From NCBI GenBank assembly GCA_965644295.1, contig CBFFRP010000288.1:186001-250000 (forward strand): a stretch of DNA of 64,000 nucleotides, given 5' to 3'. The position numbers were made by a program, and so were the translations under genes. This stretch comes from Paraphysomonas bandaiensis. Its lineage: Eukaryota > Protista > Chrysophyceae. Positions 8,364 through 64,000 of this stretch are shown in pieces. The notes beneath the pieces were generated by a model that worked only from the letters and a program-made list of their open reading frames with translations, did no database searches and was not told the origin of the DNA. Position 1 is the stretch's first letter, and each line of letters begins with the position of its first letter.

Positions 8364-9956
8364 TCAATGCTTATCCAATTCCATTAATAGCTTCAGACTC
8401 TCCTCATACACTAAAAACGTTAACGCAGCGTTGGGTGCTACCTTCAAACAATTCGGAATGAGTCCTTTGAAAAAGCCTCTAAGACCTTCGTTTCTACAAT
8501 CATATTCGTTACTATCAAATCTATAACAATGTTCTATAACAATGTTCATTGTAAATAATAAGGAATAAAGAAACTCAAGATATGGTTAGAAACCACGAAA
8601 TTTCAACCAATGTTGTACTTACCTTAAAATGCTTCGAATGCAATCCACCGATCCCGTGTATTTTGGTACCTCTACCCTGGATCCAGTGGATAATACGGTG
8701 ATTTCACTTCGTTGCTGCAACCGACTTTTGACTACTTGATAGGGATATGTCACAGTTGCTGCAACGATCTTCGCTGTTCCCCCAATAACCATTGAGACAT
8801 AGGCAGGCTGTATATATATAAGTGTCATATTTGCAGGATGTAATACCGCAAAAGTTCTACAATACCTGCTTATGCTCTTTCGTATTTACTACAGCATCCC
8901 ATTTGTTCATATAAGACTGAAATATCTTTTTCATCCACTCGTATGCCGCAAACTATAGAAAATACTCGTCATTATGTAACATATCACATATACGATTTAC
9001 ACCATAATATTGTAATTTAATACTCCAATTTTTGCGATTTAACAGGCAATAATCATAGGAATACAGCCCAGAACTGAAAAACTAGCGATATACTCCAAAT
9101 AACACCTACCTGGACGGCACCATGGGAAGTCAAAAGCAGGGCCGGAACAGTACCCTTATAAAATCCCATCACACCCTCCTCCTTGAATATTGTTTTGATT
9201 GCGTCTAATAAAGAGTTGTAGAGGGCAAGATGCGTCACGATAACGAGTTGTCATAGCATCACGCACAAACATACCTACAGGACCGTTGTACTGTTTCACA
9301 TTCGCTATTTTCTGAGATCCTTGCAATTGCAAGCGTGTCTTCAGTAACCATATAGGGTTCGTAAAGAACACCATAATGACACCTGCCTCTATTCCTGACA
9401 GCAGGTGCTGGGAGGTTCCTAGTCTATTCTCATTGCAATCTGCATCGGCGTGCATTGCATTTAATTTACGTTTCTATATACAATAATTTCATAATATTGT
9501 TTGTTTGTATGAAAACTATAATCAGATGTAACCTTAGCATGTTCGTAGAAGTAAAAGTATCCACCCCAAGACATTGCCGAGGCGATAGTAGCCGGTGTAA
9601 GCCCCTATACACATATACCATCATATATACATAATCTCAGTATATATATATATGAATATACATTATACAGTCCTTTAATCCCTTCCAAACGATATATTGT
9701 ACGAAATGCTTGAGTTAGTGATTGATATGCTAGTCCAGTCTCATGTACTTGATATCTCACTTTAATGAGATCAATGGGATATAATAGAGCTATAGAGGGG
9801 TTAGAGATAGAGGCTTAGGGGGTGTTCTATAGAGTATACCTGCTGAGACTACACCAGCAGTTGTACCTGCAATAAAATGCTGTATAGAAGGGTTAGGAGG
9901 GGATGGAGAGGAGGGAGAGAGTGAACCTCATGGACTGTTGGTTGGCGACGTTTCAT
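8364..9956 (-). CDS. Mitochondrial carrier (SLC25 family), folate/FAD-carrier-like; many short introns
   Basis: Spliced start MKRRQPTVHE/HFIAGTTAGVVSA. Three carrier signatures: YPIDLIKVR, NPIWLLKTRLQ (W typical of the folate/FAD subfamily) and YPYQVVKSRLQ. C-terminal EGLRGFFKGLIPNCLKVAP. Confidence 0.85.
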
Positions 9957-10090
9957 TTGTGTGTTTTGCAATATAATGAATGTGTGGTTTGTTGAATTGC
10001 TATGTGCTGCACAAGTATGTCCCCCACACAACAGAGACTTGCAACGCTGTGGCTAACAGTCCTAAGAACCCCCCTCACTTCATAGAACAA

Positions 10091-10488
10091 ACATACATAC
10101 ATACATACATACATACATACATACATACATACATACATACATACATACATACATACATACATACATACATACATACATACATACATACATACATACATAC
10201 ATACGTACATACATACATACATACATACATACGTACATACATACATACATACATACATACATACATACATACATACATACATACATACATACATACATAC
10301 ATACATACATACATACATACATAATGTACATACATAATGTACATACATAATGTACATACATACATACATACATACATACATACATACATACATACATACA
10401 TACATACATACATACATACATACATACATACATACATACATACATACATACATACATACATACATACATACATACATACATACATACA

Positions 10489-10522
<34 letters not shown>

Positions 10523-10707
10523 CATACATACATACATACATACATACATACATACATACATACATACATACATACATACATACATACATACATACATACA
10601 TACATACATACGTACATACATACATACATACATACATACATACATACATACATACATACATACATACATACATACATACATACATACATACATACATACA
10701 TACATAC

Positions 10708-10738
<31 letters not shown>

Positions 10739-10808
10739 CATACATACATACATACATACATACATACATACATACATACATACATACATACATACATACA
10801 TACATACA

Positions 10809-10840
<32 letters not shown>

Positions 10841-11102
10841 CATACATACATACATACATACATACATACATACATACATACATACATACATACATACATA
10901 CATACATACATACATACATACATACATACATACATACATACATACATACATACATACATACATACATACATACATACATACATACATACATACATACATA
11001 CATACATACATACATACATACATACATACATACATACATACATACATACATACATACATACATACATACATACATACATACATACATACATACATACATA
11101 CA

Positions 11103-11130
<28 letters not shown>
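10091..11130. repeat. (ACAT)n microsatellite, about 1.04 kb
   Basis: Directly visible. A few variant units and a 13-nt subrepeat (ACATAATGTACAT x3) at about 10319-10359. Confidence 0.99.
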
Positions 11131-11136
<6 letters not shown>

Positions 11137-11545
11137 AATACATACGCTGTATCTTGAATACAACATCGTATTTCAGTGACCAATGAACTCCACTCATTCC
11201 CCCAACCAAATCCCTGAATTCAATGGCGATAAATTCCAATAAAAAAATACAGATTTTCCTTCTATTTTCCACATTATTATTACTAGAAACCTCCTATATT
11301 TCTTCGCCAAAATATTGTGTGTCCATAATGTCATATGACCTTCTATATAAGATTCGTTGAAATATTCGTTTTTTCTTCACTTCTATGACATTTCTAGGTG
11401 GAAATCATAAAGTATTGTATTCCTTACATCTTCATCTACACTCTCATCCTCATATGGCTCACTCATTATTAAGAAGAATGAATATTTGAAATTATAACAA
11501 TCAATCATATTATTAGAATTTTGTGATTGTTTTCTATTATTGAAG

Positions 11546-13019: not shown

Positions 13020-14270
13020 GTTACACTTGAGGTGGGCCCAGTCCCGGATGCATATTTATTCGTCAAGGCCTAAAGACGTCTACCTGGATACTGGAAGGAA
13101 AATGGTGCCTTACTTCCGCACAAACTGGCCCTAGCTGGCGGCGGCAGATTCAAGGTCAAGGACAGTTCACAACTAAGACAACACAACATACTCAATCAGC
13201 CCCGACATGGGGCAAATCCTACAGCAATGGTGGGAATAGAGCCAAAACAAAGCTTGGACTTGACCTGAACAAAGCCAGATGCTCTGACTGTGGTTTTCTA
13301 CTTGACTATATATCAAATGTATGTGTCTTGATTGCCTCCATCTCTCAGATACGAGAATCCGCCGTTCAGAGACACAAGGAGTGTCTGCGGGAACTCCTAA
13401 TTGACCCAACCCTTTCGTCATTCTCAAAAAACTCTCTCGTAGAGCGTGGAGTACCTCACTTCCGCAGGTTGAACGATTCTGGACAGAACTTCACTGAAGC
13501 TCAAATGGAAAGCGTTTTCGGAATACAGTACAATTGCTCCCTCAATGCGCGTGGACTACCTGCCATTGAAACAGCAGTTGTTACCCTACTTCAACCGCTC
13601 TATACTGTGCTTCAAGATCGTAGTGGGCGTTATGCTATCAACCAGAAGGGCCACAACGACTCCCCCCCTAGACCGCGTCAGCGACGTTTTCCCCCAGCTC
13701 GAGCCCAAAATGCCGCAATACACGATTTCTATCGAGCAACACCCTGAGTAAGCCACGGGTTCTACGCTTACTAAGAGTAAACCGGAGACCTAACGTGTTG
13801 CCTTCCTCTTCCACCACCCCCGCCTCAGCAGCGATGCCACGATTCCGACTCCGTCAGCTACTCCTCTGCCCCAGCTCAACTGGCGGCTAAAGCCATTCAA
13901 AGACACCCCAATATACCCCCTCGCACATATATCTCAGGTTAGGAACACTTGATTCACTGGTACAGAATCCTCCTTCACAAAGTCCTGAGGAGCCCTACCA
14001 AGGGGCGTCCTCCTGACTGACCCTTCTGTACTTCAAGGACTAACGTCCGCAACGAGCTTCTTCCTCACACACAAGAACGGAAGTGGTTGCACAAGCATCT
14101 GTTGCGTTAAATAGTAGGATATGATAATTCGTGGTAGTTAGTTACTGGTAGAGGTGGGTCTAGCTTGACTAGTCTTCACCTAACTACTTATCTGGTGTCG
14201 GTTCTTAATAATAAGACTTTCACACATGAGGTAAGCCCAGCTTATTCGTCAAGGCCCAAAGACGTCTACA
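13020..14270 (+). other. Possible decayed mobile element bounded by imperfect direct repeats; contains a 139-codon ORF remnant
   Basis: TTATTCGTCAAGGCC(T/C)AAAGACGTCTAC at 13056-13083 and 14242-14269. The interior is C-rich and GC-richer than the flanks. Confidence 0.35.
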
Positions 14271-15864: not shown

Positions 15865-16368
15865 ATGACAAATCCAGCTCCATTGCGTCACATAGCTACT
15901 AAGATGTCATATGAAGATATATGTGACTGTATACAAAGTGGAAGATTAGAAAAACTTGGCAGATCAGACTCTCAAGAACTCATTTACCGCACAGAAAATC
16001 AAGCTCTACTAGCTGAATGGGTCAGTGCATCAGATTATATTCTAGCTACAAAATTTGAGTTCATGTATTACAAGAATACAGACGGTAGAAAACAAATTCA
16101 ACGACCATTCCATGTATCTGAAACTGGTAAAGTGAAGCTATTATTAAATGATTATCCATATTATTTTGAAGATAATGTTCGTCATTATATATTATGGAAA
16201 ATTAATTCGAATGTTATTGAGGATGATATAAGTGTCTCGGTGCAGGAATTGAGAACACTAATAAATATAGAAGATTATACGTATTTTATTAATCCTCCTC
16301 ACCTTATGTCTATACCTGATATAAACCATGCTCATGTAATTGTGAAATTGAACCCCGATGAATCGTAA
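15865..16368 (+). CDS. DUF3605 / GIG1-like (HIT-like) protein
   Basis: Motifs LLNDYPYYFEDNVRHYILW and FINPPHLMSIPDINHAHV. An additional 5' exon is possible. Confidence 0.75.
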   Translation: MTNPAPLRHIATKMSYEDICDCIQSGRLEKLGRSDSQELIYRTENQALLAEWVSASDYILATKFEFMYYKNTDGRKQIQRPFHVSETGKVKLLLNDYPYYFEDNVRHYILWKINSNVIEDDISVSVQELRTLINIEDYTYFINPPHLMSIPDINHAHVIVKLNPDES

Positions 16369-16975
16369 TCGTAATTATGTTACTGTGGTTATGGATTGAT
16401 CATGCTGCTCTAGTGAGTAACCTCTTACTTTCGGCTATTATCCTTCAGACGAACTGAGACTCTGATGTTACGTTATTATCGTATAATATGATTATGTCGT
16501 TGTTAAGTTGTTTAGGAAGATTGGTTAGATCGACAAATAAAAGCACACTACTGGCAACGGGTTAAGGATTGGTTTCATTGAATATAGCTATACAAATACT
16601 CCGCTGGAGTGATACTGCCTCGGCAAATATTTATCTGTGGTGATGGGTCTACATGGCTACCCAAACTACAGGATACCGTTGCTACTTAGCGCAGGGTAAT
16701 ATCAGAGCATATGTCTGTGTTGTCTTGGGTTTTGGAGGTAACATACTTGTCCCTAGTAAACTCTAAATTTATATGACGTTTCTAGTTCCTACTAAACTAA
16801 AAAGCGCCGTTCTACTAAATATTTCCAACGTTCCTCTTAAATTAAAAATGGTAGCTGAGCCTACTAAATTTGCAGACATTCCTATTAAGTCAAAAATTTT
16901 ATTCGGTTCTACTACATTTAAACACGGCTCAAATGTAGTAGAACCGAAAATAGTTTGGAAGGAACAAATGGTAAA

Positions 16976-17025: not shown

Positions 17026-17561
17026 ACACCGATGGCCTATGGGAGCTATCAGGGAAGAGTATATTCCCTTTCTTACCCAGCCGGAACTATTTCCATGTAT
17101 AGCCAGTATCCAAGAAAACGTGTTGGTCCTAAGTATCAAGTATCATCGGGCTTGGGAGAATATAGTACATGAACGTCTAATTATTAGCAATAGGCGTCAA
17201 GAATCATCACTTGATAAGTAGTTATATGAAGACTAGTCAAGCTAAGTCGGAAAAATTTAATTTTGGCCCTTTTTGGCCCTCGGCCCGCTAGGGCCCTCGG
17301 CCCGCATTTGGCCCTCTACTACAACTAACAATAATAACAATAATTCTTAATTAAAAACACACACAACACACACTACAACCACAAGCAACAATAACGCACA
17401 AAGCAAAGGGCAGTATTACGCACAAAGCAAAGGGTCAAATTTAGCAAGAGTTATTAATATCTTAAGCAAGAGCAACTTTATACCAAAACATTTTTCGGAG
17501 CTGGGGGCTCCCCACGCTTCGACTCTACGAGCCGGCGTCCACTGCCCCCAGGCCCCCGCCC

Positions 17562-19099
17562 CTAAACAACGCCGGGGCCGGCCCCACCGGCCCTATTCCG
17601 GCGTTTGGCGCCGGTCTGAGCCCTGCCGGCGGCAACACAGCATGTCTCAATCTCCTCGGTGAAAGCACAGTCTTCGGCTGTCACTGTAGACTCCTTGCCA
17701 CATCCAGTGTATTTCACTATCTCCTCAATTGAAATACAATCATCAGTGGGTACATCGACAACATATCCATTCTGCAGTCGGCACTGCTCGCGATAGCCAA
17801 CGATGGACCCCTCGTAAAATCCAACTCTCACCACCTCGTACATGCACCCATCCTCAGGATCATAGTGGCTCTTCCCAATCAAAAACTTGTATTGGTTGAG
17901 CTGCGCAAACTTAGTCCTTTGGACTGACCTGTCCATTTCAAATGCAGCGTAGTCCTCTGGCAATGTGAATTGCTGGAATGGCAGATGTTTCGGCCGGGAT
18001 GCATGACCCCTGAGAATTTTGTTTCGAAGTTCGACGTATTCTTGACTTAGCTTCCGAATAGTACTCACATATAACACCACGGAAGGATGCGCAGTGGGAA
18101 AAGCCTCGTTCAGCTTTCTGTTAAACCTTTCCAGTGGATTGTTGGTTCTATTAATCAAGCGGGATGTTGATGACTCGTCTGTTACAATGCCATGCACATT
18201 CCAATCATTAGGATCGGATCCAGTTACAGGCTTGCCCTCAAAGTTCCGTTTGATAGCATTCATCAGACCCTTCTCGAAATCCACTGAGCCATTGATGATC
18301 TCCATCATGAAATCTGTTGAGGCCTTACTCAAATAAAGAGCCATGGAATACACTTCTTCAAACTTCGATTGCAGCAATATATAAAATACAGGAATGTATA
18401 GGGACGAGGCGTAGTCATATATCATAATTACTAGACACTGAGAAAATCCCTTTGGCACACATTTAAAAGTACAGTCTATAAACAGATGGACCGGACCACC
18501 CTTTACAATATTGATTAAATCAGGATGTGCAAAGCCAATTATCTTCTGCATCTGATTGCTAACATTGATTGAAGTATTGAACTGTAAAAATAGTCTCTCG
18601 TCGTCATCAGCACAGTTCACAAGCGGATACGACGATATAATTCCTTCCCAATCATTGAACTCTAAACGTCTACACTGATACACCAAAGCTTTGAGTTTCG
18701 ACGTTTCGAGATATCTATATGGCATTCCTACCGAAATAAGCAAAAGAAAATGAAGTGAAAACAGCAAAAAGAAAAAAATATCAATTTTCTCACCGAGCTG
18801 CTTATATTTCGCTCGCGTTGTTTCCGCAACTTCATTTGCAATCGCAATGGAGGACTTCGAAACATCTTTCAACGCCATTGCTTCACAAAGTTGTTTCATT
18901 TCACCACTTGCGTCATATACACCTTTACAAAACGACGACCTCTCCTTGGAATTATCATCAGATGTTGGTGAATCTGAAGGCAATATAAAGATGGCGGCAC
19001 CACATTTGTGCTCCTCTTTCCCCTTTGAAATTATCAGTTTTTCATCAGATTCTTCTGCTTGCTCGTGAACAAGAATTGTCAATTTAGCTGGACAGCCAC
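17562..19099 (-). pseudogene. MULE transposase, left inverted copy (5'-truncated, internally deleted)
   Basis: Mirror image of 19167-20704. It lacks the YYRCS half of the zinc finger, which lies in the spacer on the other strand. Confidence 0.85.
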
Positions 19100-19115
19100 T
19101 GATCCATATATTTAG

Positions 19116-20704
19116 GAAATTTGAAGGGTTATTATCGGTGCTCAAAACACCGGAAAGGAAGAACATGTGGCTGTCCAGCTAAATTGACAATTCTTGTTCA
19201 CGAGCAAGCAGAAGAATCTGATGAAAAACTGATAATTTCAAAGGGGAAAGAGGAGCACAAATGTGGTGCCGCCATCTTTATATTGCCTTCAGATTCACCA
19301 ACATCTGATGATAATTCCAAGGAGAGGTCGTCGTTTTGTAAAGGTGTATATGACGCAAGTGGTGAAATGAAACAACTTTGTGAAGCAATGGCGTTGAAAG
19401 ATGTTTCGAAGTCCTCCATTGCGATTGCAAATGAAGTTGCGGAAACAACGCGAGCGAAATATAAGCAGCTCGGTGAGAAAATTGATATTTTTTTCTTTTT
19501 GCTGTTTTCACTTCATTTTCTTTTGCTTATTTCGGTAGGAATGCCATATAGATATCTCGAAACGTCGAAACTCAAAGCTTTGGTGTATCAGTGTAGACGT
19601 TTAGAGTTCAATGATTGGGAAGGAATTATATCGTCGTATCCGCTTGTGAACTGTGCTGATGACGACGAGAGACTATTTTTACAGTTCAATACTTCAATCA
19701 ATGTTAGCAATCAGATGCAGAAGATAATTGGCTTTGCACATCCTGATTTAATCAATATTGTAAAGGGTGGTCCGGTCCATCTGTTTATAGACTGTACTTT
19801 TAAATGTGTGCCAAAGGGATTTTCTCAGTGTCTAGTAATTATGATATATGACTACGCCTCGTCCCTATACATTCCTGTATTTTATATATTGCTGCAATCG
19901 AAGTTTGAAGAAGTGTATTCCATGGCTCTTTATTTGAGTAAGGCCTCAACAGATTTCATGATGGAGATCATCAATGGCTCAGTGGATTTCGAGAAGGGTC
20001 TGATGAATGCTATCAAACGGAACTTTGAGGGCAAGCCTGTAACTGGATCCGATCCTAATGATTGGAATGTGCATGGCATTGTAACAGACGAGTCATCAAC
20101 ATCCCGCTTGATTAATAGAACCAACAATCCACTGGAAAGGTTTAACAGAAAGCTGAACGAGGCTTTTCCCACTGCGCATCCTTCCGTGGTGTTATATGTG
20201 AGTACTATTCGGAAGCTAAGTCAAGAATACGTCGAACTTCGAAACAAAATTCTCAGGGGTCATGCATCCCGGCCGAAACATCTGCCATTCCAGCAATTCA
20301 CATTGCCAGAGGACTACGCTGCATTTGAAATGGACAGGTCAGTCCAAAGGACTAAGTTTGCGCAGCTCAACCAATACAAGTTTTTGATTGGGAAGAGCCA
20401 CTATGATCCTGAGGATGGGTGCATGTACGAGGTGGTGAGAGTTGGATTTTACGAGGGGTCCATCGTTGGCTATCGCGAGCAGTGCCGACTGCAGAATGGA
20501 TATGTTGTCGATGTACCCACTGATGATTGTATTTCAATTGAGGAGATAGTGAAATACACTGGATGTGGCAAGGAGTCTACAGTGACAGCCGAAGACTGTG
20601 CTTTCACCGAGGAGATTGAGACATGCTGTGTTGCCGCCGGCAGGGCTCAGACCGGCGCCAAACGCCGGAATAGGGCCGGTGGGGCCGGCCCCGGCGTTGT
20701 TTAG
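19116..20704 (+). pseudogene. MULE (Mutator) DDE transposase, right copy (no native start, CxxH region deleted)
   Basis: WRKY/FLYWCH-like finger YYRCS..CPAK..H-C; catalytic FIDCTF, VDFE, RTNNPLERFNR; IPVFYILL motif; probable in-frame 66-nt intron at 19473-19538. Confidence 0.85.
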
Positions 20705-21449
20705 GGGCGGGGGCCTGGGGGCAGTGGACGCCGGCTCGTAGAGTCGAAGCGTGGGGAGCCCCCAGCTCCGAAAAATGTTTTGGTATAAAGTTGCTCTTGC
20801 TTAAGATATTAATAACTCTTGCTAAATTTGACCCTTTGCTTTGTGCGTAATACTGCCCTTTGCTTTGTGCGTTATTGTTGCTTGTGGTTGTAGTGTGTGT
20901 TGTGTGTGTTTTTAATTAAGAATTATTGTTATTATTGTTAGTTGTAGTAGAGGGCCAAATGCGGGCCGAGGGCCCTAGCGGGCCGAGGGCCAAAAAGGGC
21001 CAAAATTAAATTTTTCCTTGTCATCGCTGAAGCGATATCGTCACAAGTCACAAGTACCAATCATTATTACCAAAAATCTTAACCACACAGAATCCTGTAA
21101 AGTCAGGATATTTAGTGTAGTAAAGCTAGTCCATTGCATACTGGTAATGTTCATATACAGTATTCTTCGAGTAACGAGGCTATAATTCAAAACTTCAAGA
21201 ATAGAGCTTATCAATAAGAAAATTTGAAAAATGTCTGTTATACACTGGCGAAAAGTTATATAAGAGATAGCTATCATCGGTAAAATTATTTCCTATCGAT
21301 CTCGTTCACAAGAATTGCAATCGATGTCATACAAATTTGACCTCTACCTTTCGCAAAATAAAAATAAAATTATTGTTACATGAAGTCACTACAATTTCGG
21401 TACAGCGTATACTTATTGATATAATTTCTTAGCAATATACTGTGTATTG

Positions 21450-23914
21450 TCAAGGTGGAGTATTCGAGTCGTATGTTTTCTCTCCGATATCTTTCGGAGA
21501 AGTACTACGGCTGTAAGTATGGTCAGCCAACAAAGTTGACCGAGATTTTAAAATAGCAAACTCATACGTGGTGTTCTCTTCATCTTCGTTATCGTCATCA
21601 CTAATATCATTCAGACTGGGAGTACGAGGTCCACTTTTTCCATCAGCGTCCATCGAAAACTCAGTTTTCTCAACACCAGAAAGAGCAAAGCTGATCTGGG
21701 AGGACGGTAGTTTAGATCCAGCTGCACTAGGAGGGGCAGATATATAAGTAGGAGGGTGCGGTTGACCGTATACCTCCAGTACAGCACGATGAAGTCTAGC
21801 AGCAATATCCCCATGACCAGCTGACATAGCAACATCTGCCGGTCGTCTTCCACGTATGTCTTGAGTCAAGAGATTGTTGGGCCGACGAGACATATGTGAC
21901 AATGAGCCAGATCGTCTCATAGGATCAACAGTCTTATATTCTTTCTCACTAGATGCATGCATTCGTTTCCACATGGAAGAGTCAGTACGTGTTTTATTGC
22001 CAGAATATTCAAGGCGCTTCTTATCCTCTTGAGCATTATGTACGTATACGACACCTTCTTTATCAATACACTTCTCTTCCATATCAATAGGAGGACAATA
22101 CTTCTCCCACAATATCTGCTCAGCTGATATCACAACTTCACACACACCACTCCAACCACCTTCGGCAGCATGATGCAACGCTGTCATGCCGTTCATATCA
22201 ACTCCCGTGTACGGCACCCCATGGTCAATTAACAGACGAACGACCAGGTCGTGGCCACACATCGCCGCCATGGCCAAAGCTTGACGACCTTCACAGTCTC
22301 TTGCAAGAGGCAAACACTCTAGTAGGGATACCGGAGAAACGTTAAAAAAATAGTCCTCCGCCACCTGTCGGTTTGTTAGTGTGTTAGAGGTCGTGGCTCC
22401 ATCTGCAGCACTTGGAAGTTGTTTTTCTACTCCAGTTGAGCAATTTAGCAGCAACTGAACGACATCTACACATCCTGATGTGCATGCTAACATAAGCGGC
22501 GTTTCTCCCTGTAATTCACTTACTGTGTCCACGCTTACAATTCGTGAAGCCTTTATATCCCCTTGCCTTCCACCATGACGGTTGGGATACTGCTTTAGAT
22601 CCAATAACATCTTCACACATGCCGCATCTCCTAAAGCACAAGCAAGCATAAGGGGAGTATATCCATCAGCCCTTCCTTTACGCCAGTTGACCATAGAGGG
22701 CAACGAGCCAGCTCCCTCCCATCCAACAAGCACAGAGCTATAACGGCGAAGAAACCGAAGCAGAAGTTTCAAACACATTGGCCCTCCAATGATAGCAGCA
22801 TGAAGTGCACACCCACCACCTAAAGCATCATGAACTCTGAGTTACTGCATACATCCACATATAAACACACATATATATACGCACCTCGTTTCCATCTCTC
22901 CTGCTGTCTCACCATTGGGCGATAACCTTTCGCGAAAAAGGATTTGTCCACAATACTAGTATGAGGGATACCGGTACATCCACTAGCCGTTCTATTACAA
23001 GGTGCATCGTGCGAGTTAGCTGTAGGTACCGCCAAACGTGTCCCAGTGCCCTGAAAACACAGGTTCCCAGCACGCTGTAGAAATACTCGAACTATTGGCA
23101 GGTTGCCAGCTACGAGAGCCATATCCAGGGCGTTGTAACCAACTTCATCCTCCCGTAGTGCCAGAGCAGAGCGGAGGAGATTTTTTCGTCCTAAAGCTTC
23201 CACTAACTCAGTAACTAGTGCTGGTGAGCCGAAGACTGCAGCATGATGTAACTCACTTCTCCTGTCTCCACGCAATGACTGCAACGAAATACACCGCGAG
23301 AGTGGGACATAACGAGCTCGCAACTTGAGAGACACAGCACCGGAAGAAGTACCTTGCGGAGATACAAGAGAGAGAATCTCCGTACACCCGTAGTACGGTT
23401 CACTACACACGGAAGGGTAATGACTTCCACTATTTCTCCAGGCATCAATATCGACATGACCTCGTACAGCCTCACTTTTTTCTTGAGAAAGTACTATACC
23501 ATGAAGACAAACAGACACCATACCAATTGTAGATGTTGAAAAAAAACCTTTTCGAAGTATTGTAAATGTAACTTTAATAGCACCATAATACTCATATATA
23601 TCAAATATAAATTCTTTGTTGAATGAGTCTCTTGAATTAGCAGGTACAGTAAACTTACGTGATGATCCATCCACAGTTACAATACATTCATATGATTGTT
23701 TAAAACTAAATCGAGTAGTAATTAAACCATATATATCAGTTATATTTATAATAAGTTTTCCTTCTTTAATATATGGATCGATGATTGGAGGTGAATGTGT
23801 GGTGGATTGATAGAACTCGGTGAGTTCATGGAGTAATTGATCTTCATTGAAAGTTAAACCGAATGTATCTAGCATTGAAGTATCAAAATCACCACTAAAA
23901 TCATTAATATCCAT
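21450..23914 (-). CDS. C2-like domain plus ankyrin-repeat protein; 2 exons
   Basis: Ankyrin motifs GYTPLMLAC, GETPLMLAC, GMTALHHAA, SELHHAA and an N-terminal C2-like beta pattern. An intron at about 22820-22884 joins the two ORFs in frame. Confidence 0.85.
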
Positions 23915-31298: not shown

Positions 31299-34200
31299 CT
31301 GTAGGAAGGCGGGTACGTATCTTGGCGGTTTTTTTTTGCACTTTTCAGATGCACTTAAAATAACACTCACTGCATGTCTGATCGCAGTGAAAGCATCATT
31401 GGAAACGTAGTGATTTTACCCATATTTCATTCTAAGTGACGAACTGCACTCATAATCTGAATCTTTTGATATTCATCCTCAAAGTGAGCCCCTTAAGAGG
31501 TTTTTGACCTCATTTCAGTTTTTGGTTTTTCAAAATGGCGGGATTTTTCCCTCTCAGATGACTGCAAATCACAGTCACTTAAATTAAATTGGAGTATTTG
31601 GAGATGGTCATTGCTCATAGCGGCCATGTGGCGATACAGGTAGACTAATTTCATAGTGCTTGACACGATGGTGCTCTTACTTTCAACTGATTCGCAGTAT
31701 TCATGGTGATAAGTTCTGGTTGGGGAGGAGGGGTCGATTTCGATACGCCGGCACACCACACATGCGAATGACCTCAACTGACCTGTAGATATACACTCAA
31801 CTATTGCTCATTATATGCGCAATACTATCAGCACACTAATTTGAGTATACGCTCTCCTCTGCGGCATTGTGCATCACATTTCTGAAATAAGCGTGTGTTT
31901 AGATTAGCCACACGATGACTCTAATGCTGCACCTCTGGAGCGAAATGGAGGCTCTGGTGAATTGAGGAGGAAAGAGGGAGGACTCTGGAGCTGTTTCGGG
32001 CTCAGGGTGATGCCCGGATTGAAAATTCACTATTCTACAGGGGTCAGGGTGAGGCATGCGGAACAGCACATGTAGACAGTGAAATTCATTGCACGGGGCT
32101 CTGCACGCAGTGAAACGTAGAGGGATCCACATTGACGCAGCCCACCAGCGATCCTTGGCCGAATGTTTTTGGAACTGTGGATGTGGTCAAACCGACTGGT
32201 GCTTCCCCCGTCATGACTGATCGCTATCCTAAACTTTTCAATGGTTGAACACCCAGACTCATAGTGGGTCGACTTTGATCCATGGGACATAGGGTACCCC
32301 TCTTGAGGAACAGCGGGAGCTCAGCAACAGCCTGCACTGGATAAAGGTCAGAGGGAACCTGACCACCTCAGTATTCATACGATTCATAGTACTAAACCTT
32401 GCTCTCCAAATATATGTTATTGATGTCCAGTAGTATAGGAGTACTACAAGTGATAGATTAACTAAATTATTATTTTGAATTGTTTTTGTTCTGTTGCATA
32501 TTTACTAAAATTGTTTCTACTTCTTAATTTATATTATGTTACACCCATTGAGATTTACTTAAAATCGGACATTGACTGTGTCGTAGAAGCTGGCTTAGTT
32601 TGGTCAACAAGAAGAAGTGTGTAGCCATCAGTGTTGAACTTTATTACTTTCATTCAACTCGTAATTAAATTTCACACTGGAGAAAGAAAATATTAAAAAT
32701 CCAAAACAAAAACGATGTTACGTAAAATCATACATACGACAGAGTTAAAGTAGATACGAATATGTACTGCTGGTTTGTGGTATGTATGCGTTGACTTTGC
32801 ATGAGCTGAAGTGATTACAATTGTATGCACTTTATCATGCGAAATATCCAAAGAAAATAAAGGACCGAACAGAATCTCAAAAGAAAATAAAGGACCAAGT
32901 GGGGTCAAAACAAAATAAGAGACTCGCAAGTACGCGATTAAATAGCAAGTAACCTACGCCGCATCGATTGGCTCTCGATCTGATTCCGATACATAAACCT
33001 CCTCTCTCTCCACCTCCACTCCCCCGTGCAGCTGTTTCAACTTGTCAGACATCGGACCTTCGAGCTTGGCTATGAGGTAGGCCTTCGTGCCAACCTTTAG
33101 CTCAGGATCAATAGGAGTAGTTGCCTTAGGAAGGACAATTAGAGCGGCCTTTAGAACATCATTATTGGCCGTGCGCCAGTCATATTGCTGGTCGCGCACA
33201 CGTACCAAAAGTGCCTCCAACGCCTCAACATGTCGGTGATATTCTTCCATCTGGCGGCGCTCCTTTTCGTCCTTACGGCGCTCTTTAGCCTGTCGCTCTT
33301 CCTCCCTCCGAGCCATGTAGGCCTCAATACGCTCGGCCGTTGACAGCACTGCACAGTGCCCCGTAGTGGTGTTGGGCATACCACCCCTGTCGTCCACCCC
33401 TCCCCCCTCCCCTTCTGCATCCTGACCCCACACCTCATTCTCTAGGGCAACGTCCAAAACACTTAGCGCACCGCGGGGAATTGAGGCTTTCTTGTATCGG
33501 GCCTCCTCTGCCCTCGCTTGGGCCTGTTCACGTGCCGGAGCGAGAAAACTAGACTGGAAGAACTGTGCCGAAATACTACTAATAAGCACACAATAGTTGA
33601 TATCCCCAGGCTTGACCTCCTGGTAACGAACCCGCTTCATATTTGGGTCCTCCTCGCTGGGCTCCATGACAGCGACAGGTCTGGGTGCCGAAAGCACCGA
33701 TGCCTTACGGTCCATGTCCCGTTCATCCACATCATACACTCCAGAGATAATACTATTAGATGTCACCTTGTCTCTGTGAACCTCGGCCACCTCCTCTCCC
33801 TCCAAGGGATCAACTAAAGGCCAAGTCAGCGTCTTAGCAAAGGCTTGCTTGATGCAACCAGGTAGCGTGGGGTCAGAGGTAAACTCATTCCATGCCTGAT
33901 TGATTATTTTGTTGAAGTGAAAAACAATCATAGGCTCTCCAGGGTTTCTGTGCTTCCACCAGGAAAAGCACCTCCGATAGGCAGCTTTGAGCTTAGCGTT
34001 GGGCCCGTTATCGATGGGGGCGTCATTAACAGAGTTGTTAGCACAGAGGAAATTGATATACACATTATGAGTAATAGCGTGCCGGATAGAGTTGGGGTCA
34101 AAGTGTGAGCCATGCCCATCAATGTAGACCCACTTAGCCCTGCCCGACGCAGACATCTCCGATACAGCTATTCGAAAGGTATTCCGGTCAGCATATCCCG

Positions 34201-35717
34201 ACGGAGTAGAATCCACATGGAAAGTGGGGTCGAGGTTGAGGTGCAAATGTCCCCTCATCGTCTCGCCATCACCACCCTGGTGAATGATGATGGGTCTTGT
34301 TGTCGACCCATCCGGGCGAATACCATACAAAAGTGTTACCCAGAAGGATGTATGCTCACCGTGTCTTGCAGAGAATCGCCTTTCCTTCCGCTCCTGAAAG
34401 AGTTTGAAGGTAGGGAAGGCGTGCCCCCAAGGGTCGAAGCCAATTTCGTCCCAGTTCTCGATATCCTCCAGGTCTGGCCCATATGACGGAAAGACCCCTT
34501 TCTCTATACACTCCCTGAGGTGCTGCATGAACTTACGGGCCATAGTACTCGCCCGGGTCGGGCAGGCCGCTGCTGCCCGCTTGTAGGAAAGATCGGATTT
34601 CTTCGTCAAAGCGGGCAAGCAATTTTCACCAAGGTCAAAAGTGCAGGGTTTGAGAAAGTTGTCTCGAATAAAGGTTTTACTGCATTTTGCATGATCAAGG
34701 CGTACCGACTCCGGGGTATCCTTGCCTCCATTGGCAGTGCGTATAGCACTGGCATGGGCGCGGCAATACTCCCTGGCTAGGGCTTGCATATGGGCATTGC
34801 TGTACCTGCAAAAATAATTACAAATCGTACACTGTACGTCATCATCCACATCATACACTTTCATGTACATACCCATATCCAGCTTTATCTTGAAGGTCCA
34901 TCTTCGTAGCCATTATATCCCGATCCGCAATGGAGTGAAGCAATCCTTTAGGACCAGAAAGGGAGTAATCCAGCTCCATGATGGCCTCCTGCAGCACAGA
35001 ATGGTTCGTTGGGTCGTTCCGAAACATATTAAACTCCTTCGTGGTGAGTCCAAACAACTCCCGGATGGTGTTCATATCCCGCTCCTGGGTGCGAATAGAG
35101 ACACCGTACTCCGTGAGAACATATTTAGAGCTCTTGCCATCAATTACCCTGGCAATGAGCCCGGCCCTACGCTCTTCAACTGTGTAAACTTTGTAGCTCT
35201 GTTTGACGTCTACCTCAGGGATATTATCGATTGCGTTGATAATCGCCCTTTCTGTCGCCATACTGGGGAAGCTGCTTGTCTCTTCGGGCAGATCCGGCAA
35301 AGCCTCCAACACCAAATTAACCTTTCGCTTGTGAGGTACATTTCCTGGAAGCACACCATACTGCTTGGCACGCTTAACCTCAATCACAACATCCCTTTTC
35401 CCCAATGGGGGCAGTGTGACTTCGTCCATACGACTGTCTGTATGAGTGTGAGTGATTCGGGGTCGCTGTGGACGTCCTCGCATCATACTCGATCAATTCT
35501 ACATGAAAATCAGATCAGACGACGTCATCATGAGCAGTGATTATTGTTTACTGTACCTGATACAATTATATATAATGTAATTCTTGTATAAGTATGTGGG
35601 GTTGGTTTATAGTAAGATTTAAGGTGGAACAATGGTGGATTGACACACGAAAACCCGCCATTTTCAAAAACCTAAAAAAGAAAACCCGCCAAGATAGATA
35701 CCCGCCTTCCTACCATG
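31299..35717 (-). mobile_element. Pogo/Tc1-mariner-type DNA transposon, about 4.4 kb, with imperfect TIRs of about 35 bp
   Basis: The left end GTAGGAAGGCGGGTACGTATCTTGGCGGTTTT (31301) pairs with AAAACCCGCCAAGATAGATACCCGCCTTCCTAC (ends 35713). TA lies just outside each end (TA-CT.. / ..CATG-TA). The ends enclose a DDE_1 transposase. Confidence 0.8.
32954..35486 (-). CDS. Pogo-like DDE_1 transposase, 821 aa, 2 exons
   Basis: A 67-nt intron at 34806-34872 fuses the two ORFs in frame (AGYG/YSNAHM). Catalytic NWDEIGF, YIDGHGSH, APIDNGP; N-terminal HTH-like region (YGVSIRT); C-terminal coiled coil. Confidence 0.85.
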
Positions 35718-39252: not shown

Positions 39253-39585
39253 AAATCTTACTATAAACCAACCTCACATACTTATACAAGAACTACATGA
39301 TACAGTATATAATTGTATCAGGTAAAGTAAACAGTAATGACTGGTCATGACGACATTGTCTGATCTGATTTTCATACAGAAATGATCGAGTATGATGCGA
39401 GGACGTGCACCGCCAAGCCTAATCACACATACGTATACAGACAGTCGTATAGATGAAATTATACTGCCCCCATTGGGAAAAAGGAATGTTTTGATTGATG
39501 TAAAGTGTGCCAAACAGTGTGACGTGCTTCCAGGGAATGTACCCAATGGGGGCAGTATAACTTCCTCCATACGAATACTACTGTA
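39253..39585 (+). mobile_element. Decayed 5' fragment of the same pogo family, ending in a local inversion
   Basis: Colinear with the reverse complement of about 35335-35620, including MMRGR...THT.TDSR.DE..LPPLGKR. Positions 39542-39574 invert 39445-39477. Confidence 0.85.
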
Positions 39586-54372: not shown

Positions 54373-54588
54373 AGTATGTTTCTTGATATTTCAGTTGAGT
54401 TGTAGTAAATAGATGGCAAGCCAGTGAATTAAGTGGTATGATAACCACTATGCTGTGAGGTCATAACCATAACCCATATGCTTGGACACTATTGGCTGAG
54501 TATACGGACATATACACTGTATATTCTGCGAACTGGAATTGCATTTCCATATTCTGCTGTATACATACTGCTGTATGGTAAACAAACG

Positions 54589-54611
54589 TACCTACCTACC
54601 TACCTACCTAC

Positions 54612-54642
<31 letters not shown>

Positions 54643-55717
54643 CATACATACATACATACATACATACATACATACATACATACATACATACATACATACA
54701 TACATACATACATACATACATACATACATACATACATACATACATACATACATACATACATACATACATACATACATACATACATACATACATACATACA
54801 TACATACATACATACACATACATACATACATACATACTTACATAAATAAATACATAAATACATACATACAAAAATACATACATACATACATACATACATA
54901 CATACATACATACATACATACATACATACATACATACATACATACATACATACATACATACATACATACATACATACATACATACATACATACATACATA
55001 CATACATACATACATACATACATACATACATACATACATACATACATACATACATACATACATACATACATACATACATACATACATACATACATACATA
55101 CATACATACATACATACATACATACATACATACATACATACATACATACATACATACATACATACATACATACATACATACATACATACATACATACATA
55201 CATACATACATACATACATACATACATACATACATACATACATACATACATACATACATACATACATACATACATACATACATACATACATACATACATA
55301 CATACATACATACATACATACATACATACATACATACATACATACATACATACATACATACATACATACATACATACATACATACATACATACATACATA
55401 CATACATACATACATACATACATACATACATACATACATACATACATACATACATACATACATACATACATACATACATACATACATACATACATACATA
55501 CATACATACATACATACATACATACATACATACATACATACATACATACATACATACATACATACATACATACATACATACATACATACATACATACATA
55601 CATACATACATACATACATACATACATACATACATACATACATACATACATACATACATACATACATACATACATACATACATACATACATACATACATA
55701 CATACATACATACATAC
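54589..55717. repeat. (ACAT)n microsatellite, about 1.1 kb, preceded by a short (ACCT)n run
   Basis: Directly visible. Confidence 0.99.
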
Positions 55718-55791
55718 GCATTGGATAGATACTTTAGTAGAATTAGATGCATTGATTAGAATAGAACGAATTCTGATGCACTGGATCAAGT

Positions 55792-57102: not shown

Positions 57103-57478
57103 CATATAGTTACTAAGCCGGTGCAGATTTTTAACGCCTATTGCTAATAATAAGACTTTTAATATATAGGGTATTCACCTAGTCAAAAATAATAAGTTTC
57201 ACTCAAACATGGGAGCATACTCTAGCCATCAATTAATGAAAATGCAACCATCGTACACATGCAATACATTACATTGTATATATTGCAATATATTGTAATT
57301 GTATTGTTGAGCCTGTTTAAAATCTCCATCAATAGTATTGTTGGAACGCTATCTATCAATAGTATTACAATATATTGTTTCCTAGCCCTGCATTACATTT
57401 CATCTTTGCAATCAAAGGATTGGGCAGTTTCTCGTGACCAAGTCCGGTGAAAATCTGCACCAGCTTAGTAACTATATG
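57103..57478. mobile_element. 376-bp MITE-like unit with 29-bp TIRs
   Basis: CATATAGTTACTAAGCCGGTGCAGATTTT pairs with AAAATCTGCACCAGCTTAGTAACTATATG (1 mismatch). Non-coding AT-rich interior. Confidence 0.65.
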
Positions 57479-61398: not shown

Positions 61399-63126
61399 AT
61401 GGGGTATGTATGTGCTGTGGTTATATATATATATATGTTTTAATAATTATGAATATTTCTATATGAAAATCACGCTTATATACCATCATGTGTACTATTC
61501 ATACATACACAGCAAGTGTTTGTATTCTTTATATATATATATAGTTAAAGGCAACTGACATATAGATACACAGGCATACGACTGCTGTATGTATACTATA
61601 CAGCATGCAGCAAATGGCTGGCTGGTAGTTGAAGTATCATTCTTTTCAAATACAGTGCCGTCTTGTACGTACAGCAGAACTATCATTCTATATACAGCGG
61701 TATACAGCCATACACAAGAGTATAAACATTTTCTGCACATGTGGAATTATCTCCAGTTACAGTCCAAACAAGTGATAGCTACATAGAAATTGCAGTATTC
61801 GACACAGATGTTCAAGAGCAATGATAACAATGATAAGAAGACAACTTTGTTTTGTAGGGTTATAAGTTACGTGTTTAATCCACATGTTTTGTGGAAGCTG
61901 GATGCTAAAGTACTTCACACTGTCCCCTATCTATGATCTCAAAGAAAGCGAGCACAAGAGAGGGAGGAAATATGATATTACAAGTAAAAAAGCAAAAATA
62001 GTATCATATATAGTCAAATCTGGAACCCAACTGTCATCTAGCTATTGCCAGCATCCTTATGATACACACTGAAGCTGCTATATCCGTTTCCTCTTTATCA
62101 TGCGCACAACAATGAATGATTCCACAGCTCGAACGTAACATTTTACATAAAGCATATAACGTTAATGCTCCTGTTCAACTGTTTGATCAGTAACATGCTA
62201 TACTGGGGCAAACTCTACGCAAAAACTACACGTGGAATAGAAGAACCCAGAGTGTGAGAGTTGTATAGTCCTGTTATATCTCAGTCTTAAACATGATACA
62301 GAGGAAAAGCTGCTATACTATATAAATATGCTATAATAAAATAATTGTTGGTGCACTGTTGTCTCACTCTTATATGTGTATTACATATGATGTACTATAC
62401 ATTGATACGCATGAAAACATGATCTATCCTGCTAATTTATGAGCTTTAAGCTAGTAACCATTGTACCAGATTTTAATCATACAAAAGCGTATATTTGATC
62501 AACAATAAAAACCAAATGAGTAGTGAATGTCTCATTATTAGCAATAGGCGTGTAAGGGTTTGAACTAATGTAAAAACAAATGAAATCAAAGTGTTATTTT
62601 AAATCAATGGTACATCTGCTTGGGGAAAGACAATTGTTTTAGAATAACTCAAAACACTAATAGCTACAGTAAAAGGCCTCCTACCACAAGTCATTGCTGA
62701 GGCTTTTTGTCGTTATTGGTACTATCATATTTATGTACATCACGCTTAACTCCTCCCTCCTCCCAAAGCAATGGCTCTAATGCTGTGTTTTTCAATATAA
62801 TTGTGTAATATAATGAGGCCACTTTCAAATGGCTGTCAATATCATATTCGAGATAGAGGATAGATTCCATTTGAACTGAATATTGAAGTTGAATGTCTAT
62901 ATTTTCCTGGTACTAATATGAGCATTCTATTGAACCCAATTCAGGACAATGAAATCACTCTTTAGAAACAAAATGGGGATAAAATTGTAACCCAATGGCT
63001 AAATAAGTGTATTACACCCTATACGTACTGGCAATCACGTCGACATCCCAGAAATGAAGTTTAATTTTACAAATCGAATAACGTCAGATAGAGGTGCTAC
63101 TTCCAAAACAAAAAAGCGTTACATTT

Positions 63127-63678: not shown

Positions 63679-63765
63679 TTCGGTGATGCAAACTAGAGGT
63701 GAAAATAGGTGCAGCTCTCGTGAAGCACCAGCTGATACTTAAGAAGAAGAAGGAAAGAAGAATTG

Positions 63766-64000
63766 TATGTATGTATGTATGTATGTATGTATGTATGTAT
63801 GTATGTATGTATGTATGTATGTATGTATGTATGTATGTATGTATGTATGTATGTATGGGTGTATGTATGTATGTATGTATGTATGTATGTATGTATGTAT
63901 GTATGTATGTATGTATGTATGTATGTATGTATGTATGTATGTATGTATGTATGTATGTATGTATGTATGTATGTATGTATGTATGTATGTATGTATGTAT
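63766..64000. repeat. (ATGT)n microsatellite running off the window end
   Basis: Directly visible. Confidence 0.99.

What the first reader, a model, noticed from the sequence alone, without database searches (positions are those of the whole stretch)
17249..21017. Mu-killer-like locus: perfect 3.77-kb palindrome of a crippled MULE transposase between two convergent host genes
Seen: two 1851-bp reverse-complementary arms with a 67-bp spacer. Both outer ends are the same (3') element terminus; the 5' terminus, promoter and start codon are absent. The spacer is the native in-frame upstream continuation of the right copy (..KGYYRCSKHRKGRT|CGCPAK), so the left arm is a fold-back duplicate. There is no TSD. 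The DUF3605 gene (+, stop 16368) and the ankyrin gene (-, stop 21450) both point into it. Known: maize Mu killer is an inverted duplication of a deleted MuDR whose read-through hairpin RNA makes siRNAs that silence the family in trans. Inference: read-through here would give a dsRNA stem of about 1.85 kb, a natural transposon-killer locus in a protist. Having two identical ends, it might also move as a non-autonomous unit.
Basis: partly seen in the sequence, partly recalled or inferred. Interest (0 to 1): 0.85.

Follow-up and report, generated by a model that had tools for sequence, protein, structure and literature searches.

The report
Recurrent fold-back palindromes of active transposon
A currently active jumping gene in a marine protist has left a mirror-image doublet of its own tail end; a second such doublet elsewhere in the genome appears to have jumped as one piece, but whether either silences the family, as 'killer' loci do in maize, is untested.

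Summary
The palindrome is in the sequence: two identical 1851-nt arms around a 67-nt spacer. It derives from a young MULE family with at least 22 near-identical copies and 8-bp TSDs. The arms match a 2324-bp subfamily whose in-frame 237-bp deletion (losing CxxH) is shared by 10 ordinary copies. The centre is a fold-back at a native 6-bp inverted repeat; both outer ends are the exact 3' terminus. There is no TSD, and host DNA appears lost. A second, independent 3'-3' palindrome of this family (contig C192) has a perfect 8-bp TSD, so such units most likely insert through two 3' ends. An older fold-back has diverged arms, so the process happens in vivo. Unlike Mu killer, this keeps the 3' part and lacks the promoter end, and the host genes stop 880 and 432 nt away. 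The scan noted many similar transposon palindromes on other DNA of this genome. Verdict: a probably real fold-back by-product of transposition with killer-like architecture; killer function about 20%.

The parts
17249..19099 (-). Left arm: element positions 474-2324 of the 2324-bp (237-bp deletion) MULE subfamily, 3' terminus outermost
19094..19099 (+). 6-bp junction microhomology AGCCAC: equals native positions 401-406 (inside predicted intron 1) and the reverse complement of native 474-479
   Evidence: P of 6 nt or more by chance about 5e-4
19100..19166 (+). 67-nt spacer = native positions 407-473 (3' part and acceptor of predicted intron 1, start of exon 2); its minus strand supplies a new ATG at 19166
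19167..21017 (+). Right arm: element positions 474-2324, 3' terminus outermost
19121..20704 (+). Truncated MULE transposase frame: D, D, E kept; invariant CxxH and conserved W lost with the 79-aa deletion; first exon lost; includes a predicted in-frame 66-nt intron
17562..19166 (-). 534-aa frame on the left arm, opened by the ATG that the fold-back created
17170..17248 (+). First 79 nt of a dispersed SINE-like repeat, cut off at the arm and pointing into it; its continuation is absent at the right flank
15865..16368 (+). DUF3605 host gene, ends 880 nt before the left arm; AATAAA at 16536
21450..22778 (-). Ankyrin-repeat host gene (3' coding part), ends 432 nt from the right arm

Best explanation
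A real, recent 3'-3' fold-back derivative of an active MULE. A copy of the 2324-bp subfamily was broken near its 5' end (inferred). The single-stranded end folded back on the native inverted repeat AGCCAC-67 nt-GTGGCT and primed synthesis, and replication gave a palindrome (junction shown; pathway inferred from yeast fold-back priming). The family's transposase then used the new pair of 3' termini (inferred from arms that stop exactly at the cut site). On C192 both ends went into one target and left an 8-bp TSD; here the ends joined different host positions, or an adjacent deletion followed, so the TSD and some host DNA were lost. It cannot encode a working transposase. If transcribed it would form a stem of about 1.85 kb that the host's Dicer/Argonaute could use, but the default reading is a by-product of transposition rather than a working killer.
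For: Junction microhomology of 6 bp, P about 5e-4. Three independent near-symmetric fold-back junctions in one family (loops of 67, about 20 and about 70 nt), with single-case chances of 6%, 2% and 6% for uniform breakpoints. The C192 palindrome has a perfect TSD, GCTGATAG on both sides (chance 2e-5). The older C186 fold-back arms share subfamily SNPs and differ by 8 substitutions in 333 nt, so it formed in vivo. All 21 other testable two-ended loci have perfect TSDs, so the assembly resolves this repeat well. Both flanks are single-copy. No orphan 5' end or partner TSD was found. Fold-back priming at 5-bp repeats with a 35-nt loop is shown in yeast (PMC10622511).
Against: The missing TSD here needs a second event. 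No donor or reciprocal product is in the assembly. In yeast, fold-back works best when the break lies close to the repeat, so the break would have to be internal, not at the 5' terminus.
Confidence: 0.6

Rival explanations
1. Two separate head-to-head insertions (local hop) later lost their centre, including both 5' ends and the host DNA between them, by microhomology joining at AGCCAC.
For: It explains the lack of a TSD and the cut-off SINE-like repeat directly. Local inverted pairs exist: C363, two intact copies 536 bp apart with separate TSDs. Head-to-head pairs are known for Tam3 (NSt, bioRxiv 2024.06.24.600476).
Against: The breakpoints are nearly symmetric in three independent cases, unless processing of an extruded hairpin tip is added. 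The C192 unit has one shared TSD.
Confidence: 0.2
2. Functional killer locus (compatible with either origin): read-through from a flanking gene or from the adjacent SINE-like head makes a hairpin RNA, diced into siRNAs that silence the family in trans.
For: Perfect stem. Convergent host genes. Two Piwi genes, two RdRP genes and tandem RNase III domains in a 1695-aa frame. Precedents: Mu killer, Ac killers, Tam3 NSt.
Against: No transcript or small-RNA data. The promoter end is not duplicated, so only coding and 3' sequence (plus short shared GGCCC motifs) would be targeted. Only one weak DNA-methylase match and little CpG decay in older copies (2.3% against 1.6%). AATAAA and repeat relics lie between DUF3605 and the arm. 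No box B and no HDV-like fold was found in the adjacent repeat head. At least 22 near-identical copies show recent activity. Even for Mu killer the read-through model is disputed (PMC3440606).
Confidence: 0.2
3. Assembly artefact: a fold-back chimeric read or molecule joined two different insertion sites.
For: Fold-back reads are a known long-read artefact (PMC12870357). This is the only one of 22 two-ended loci without a TSD. One arm of the C192 palindrome shows a consensus-error pattern (14 single-base indels, nearly all away from unique anchors). The scan lists many palindromes in this assembly (unchecked).
Against: A fold-back artefact continues into the mirror image of the same flank, whereas here the arms stop at the transposon terminus and enter different single-copy DNA. 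No partner half with either candidate TSD. No fold-back of unique host sequence in 289 kb scanned. The sister case has a TSD.
Confidence: 0.12

Closest known systems
Mu killer (maize MuDR)
   Same: Inverted duplication of a deleted Mutator element, both TIRs from the same end, between or in host genes (PMC3440606, PMC1563492).
   Different: Muk duplicates the 5' TIRA and 1.3 kb of mudrA, has shown transcripts, 21-22-nt siRNAs and dominant silencing; its centre could not be sequenced. Here the 3' 1.85 kb is duplicated, the promoter end is absent, the junction is resolved, and function is untested.
Ac killers / composite insertions p1-ww-id1 and id4 (maize hAT; bioRxiv 2020.01.07.897926)
   Same: Two fractured copies with the same terminus outward, flanked by an 8-bp TSD, as on C192.
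   Different: Made from 5' termini by sister-chromatid transposition and re-replication, with large linked duplications; silencing shown; fusion point not sequenced. Here 3' termini and a MULE; linked duplications not seen (flanks single-copy).
Tam3 New Stabiliser (Antirrhinum; bioRxiv 2024.06.24.600476)
   Same: Inverted pair of one family that yields a hairpin transcript; a model for the head-to-head rival and, loosely, for the C363 pair.
   Different: Two intact copies 1.9 kb apart; no fold-back junction; suppression shown genetically.
DSB-induced fold-back inversions (yeast; PMC10622511)
   Same: Palindrome centred on a short native inverted repeat with a loop of tens of bases.
   Different: There the second junction arises by recombination at repeats; here it lies exactly at the transposon terminus.
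Muta1-type MULEs (Aedes; PMC5225508)
   Same: DDE transposase with conserved H and W, 8-bp TSDs, subterminal repeats, identical young copies with non-autonomous derivatives.
   Different: The TIRs here are short (about 70 nt) and imperfect.

Membership tests
MULE (Mutator) DNA transposon, parent family | MULE-type DDE transposase with CxxH and conserved W | tested here: met
   Full-length frame: Pfam MULE E=0.002, below the curated cut-off; 64 homologues, most with PF10551; D, D, E, C and H in 39-40 of 40 homologues. The window copy lacks CxxH and W.
MULE (Mutator) DNA transposon, parent family | TSD of 8-10 bp | tested here: met
   8 bp at 20 ordinary copies and at C192; absent at this locus.
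MULE (Mutator) DNA transposon, parent family | Terminal inverted repeats with subterminal motifs | tested here: met
   Imperfect TIR of about 70 nt with shared GGCCC-type motifs.
Mu-killer-type silencing locus | Long inverted duplication of part of an active element | tested here: met
Mu-killer-type silencing locus | Duplicated part includes the 5' TIR/promoter end (Muk, Ac killers) | tested here: not met
   Positions 1-400 are absent from contig C288.
Mu-killer-type silencing locus | Transcribed through the inversion point | not testable with these tools
Mu-killer-type silencing locus | siRNAs restricted to the stem | not testable with these tools
   No small-RNA data reached; the machinery genes are present.
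Mu-killer-type silencing locus | Dominant, heritable silencing of intact copies in trans | not testable with these tools
   Needs genetics or strain comparison.
Mobile non-autonomous palindromic unit | TSD around two identical ends, or several copies of the same junction | tested here: inconclusive
   Not met here (no TSD, single copy); TSD met for the sister unit on C192.
HDV-ribozyme/Pr77-headed retroposon (adjacent repeat as possible promoter) | Double-pseudoknot fold in the first 90 nt | tested here: not met
   A simple descriptor scored at shuffle level; no relevant Rfam match.

The most novel reading that the evidence does not exclude
An active MULE in a stramenopile repeatedly produces promoter-less 3'-3' fold-back units that its own transposase can insert through two right ends; landing next to host genes they become hairpin-RNA sources, so killer loci arise and move as a routine by-product and end the family's bursts through RNAi with little or no DNA methylation.
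Probability: 0.15. Interest if true: 0.75.

Novelty: new variant of a known kind. Interest (0 to 1): 0.4.

Why it matters
How active DNA transposons first become silenced is known from a few plant loci whose inversion points could not be sequenced (PMC3440606; bioRxiv 2020.01.07.897926). Here several killer-shaped loci of one very young family have base-resolved junctions that point to fold-back priming at short native inverted repeats, and one has a TSD, which suggests that this MULE transposase accepts two 3' ends. If small RNAs came from them, killers would extend beyond plants and be recurrent rather than rare. Without such data it is a well-resolved example of transposon rearrangement.

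Tried and rejected
The spliced transposase was joined only inside a script to read its length; the joined model was not searched. Looking for an empty allele or synteny failed: the flanks are single-copy; the only metagenome relative is 38% identical with no ankyrin neighbour; the window protein is not on record. Rejected: palindromy as the family's native form (ordinary copies are not palindromic); C17 as the missing partner (TSD does not fit); the adjacent repeat as an HDV-ribozyme/Pr77 promoter; methylation-type CpG decay. The organism is a stramenopile by named homologues; the name Paraphysomonas comes only from other agents' notes and was not checked.

Full report
Observation. The window is G000:C288:186001-250000 of a 62.6-Mb, 669-contig eukaryotic assembly. 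Arms 17249-19099 and 19167-21017 are 1851 nt and exactly reverse-complementary, with a 67-nt spacer. No TSD of 3-12 nt flanks the unit. A DUF3605 gene and an ankyrin gene converge on it and end 880 and 432 nt away. Named homologues place the host among stramenopiles; other agents' notes call it Paraphysomonas (unchecked).

The family. A genome search found three young subfamilies: a 2561-bp form (5 identical copies read in full, a sixth in part, one open frame of 612 aa), a 2324-bp form with an in-frame 237-bp deletion (10 ordinary copies, 8 of them identical) and a 1346-bp form (6 copies). All 20 testable ordinary copies have a perfect 8-bp TSD. The TIRs are about 70 nt and imperfect. The full frame is a MULE transposase. 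D, D, E, CxxH and W are nearly invariant among 40 homologues; the deletion removes CxxH and W. The right copy in the window equals the 2324-bp form from position 407 on. The 'crippling' is therefore inherited from a mobile subfamily; only the loss of the 5' end is local.

The junction. In ordinary copies AGCCAC (401-406) and GTGGCT (474-479) form a 6-bp inverted repeat around the 67 nt that are the spacer. The palindrome is centred on it. Among possible fold-back junctions with loops up to 100 nt, 6 or more bases of microhomology occur with P about 5e-4. This is the signature of fold-back priming, shown in yeast with 5-bp repeats (PMC10622511). Microhomology alone does not exclude an amplification chimera.

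The outer ends. Both arms stop at the last base of the 3' terminus and enter different single-copy DNA. The left neighbour is the first 79 nt of a SINE-like repeat; its usual continuation is not at the right flank, where alignment scores are at shuffle level. Host DNA has therefore probably been lost. No orphan 5' end, and no 5' end with either candidate TSD, is in the assembly.

Sister cases. C192:61835-65393 is a second 3'-3' palindrome, made from the 2561-bp form, with a different junction (positions 765/788, 3-nt overlap) and a perfect TSD, GCTGATAG, on both sides (chance 2e-5). A read chimera does not make a TSD, so I infer that a unit with two 3' ends was inserted in one step. One of its arms has 15 substitutions and 16 indels, 14 of one base, nearly all more than about 300 nt from unique sequence; I read this as unpolished long-read error, which also warns that arm identity is a weak dating tool. 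An older copy on C186 folds back with a loop of about 70 nt; its arms share subfamily SNPs and differ by 8 substitutions in 333 nt, so it formed in vivo. C363 holds two intact copies tail-to-tail, 536 bp apart, each with its own TSD. In 289 kb scanned I saw no fold-back of unique host sequence.

Mechanism. Shown: junction, exact termini, TSD at the sister locus, missing host continuation. Inferred: an internal break near the 5' end, fold-back, replication, then transposase action on the new pair of 3' ends, here with a deletion or a one-ended joining (0.6). Rival: two head-to-head insertions and a central deletion (0.2); it explains the missing TSD at once, but three near-symmetric junctions have single-case chances of 6%, 2% and 6% under uniform breakpoints. 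Artefact: 0.12, because no reads could be laid.

Function. The genome has two Piwi genes, two RdRP genes and tandem RNase III domains in a 1695-aa frame, but only one weak DNA-methylase match; older copies show little CpG decay. A read-through RNA would form a stem of about 1.85 kb. Against a working killer: no transcript data; an AATAAA at 16536 and two repeat relics on the left; no promoter end in the stem; a very homogeneous family. The adjacent SINE-like head points into the arm and could be a promoter, but I found no box B and no HDV-like fold. The C363 pair keeps both promoters pointing inward and is at least as good a dsRNA source. I put killer function for this locus at about 0.2.

Comparison. 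Mu killer has two TIRA ends and 1.3 kb of mudrA per arm; its centre was not sequenced and its read-through model is disputed (PMC3440606). Ac killers have two 5' termini and an 8-bp TSD, and their fusion points resisted PCR (bioRxiv 2020.01.07.897926). Tam3 NSt is a head-to-head pair with a hairpin transcript. The parent element passes the MULE tests. The locus has the architecture of a killer, fails the 5'-end feature, and cannot be tested for transcription or silencing. My paper searches found no report of a TSD-flanked 3'-3' MULE unit, but the library is incomplete.

Verdict. The scan's notes list many transposon palindromes in this genome (unchecked), which makes this look like a routine product. 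The added value is the recurrence with resolved junctions and the TSD at the sister locus. New variant of a known kind; interest 0.4.

Limits to declare. It did not call the stretch human-like, and searches used letters overlapping or matching it. The spliced model was not searched.

Noticed in passing
L055:1836-5394 (G000:C192:61835-65393): Second 3'-3' palindrome of the same family with a perfect 8-bp TSD; a host ORF (L055:210-941) points into it; one arm carries a consensus-error pattern.
   Followed up: yes
L054:782-6439 (G000:C363:512281-517938): Two intact 2561-bp copies tail-to-tail, 536 bp apart, with separate TSDs; both promoters point inward.
   Followed up: partly
L057:714-2032 (C186) and L056:1078-3488 (C86): Older copies with a fold-back duplication and with an internal inversion plus deletions.
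   Followed up: partly
window 19094-19115; L055:3610-3700: Both 3'-3' junctions touch a predicted AT-rich intron of the transposase gene (element 373-422 and 780-845); may be chance.
   Followed up: no
G000:C141:344542-344798, C374:12412-12450, C17:1-2323: Solo 3' ends identical to the young family, and a copy at a contig start; possible products of one-ended events or assembly breaks. C141 and C374 were not read.
   Followed up: no
window 17170-17248, 62524-62551, 14161-14206, 57103-57159: Dispersed SINE-like repeat (10-13-bp TSDs in some copies); two other MULE copies (L011, L029) sit 6 bp apart in equivalent sequence that resembles this repeat.
   Followed up: partly
window 39459-39560 and 32954-35433: Small inverted repeat matching 33 nt next to a transposase-like ORF on the minus strand.
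   Followed up: partly
window 9929-11186, 54539-55789, 63764-64000: Very long (TACA)n/(TATG)n microsatellites, about 1.1 kb each for the first two.
   Followed up: no
G000:C355:114848-116518: RdRP domain inside a 2752-aa open frame.
   Followed up: no
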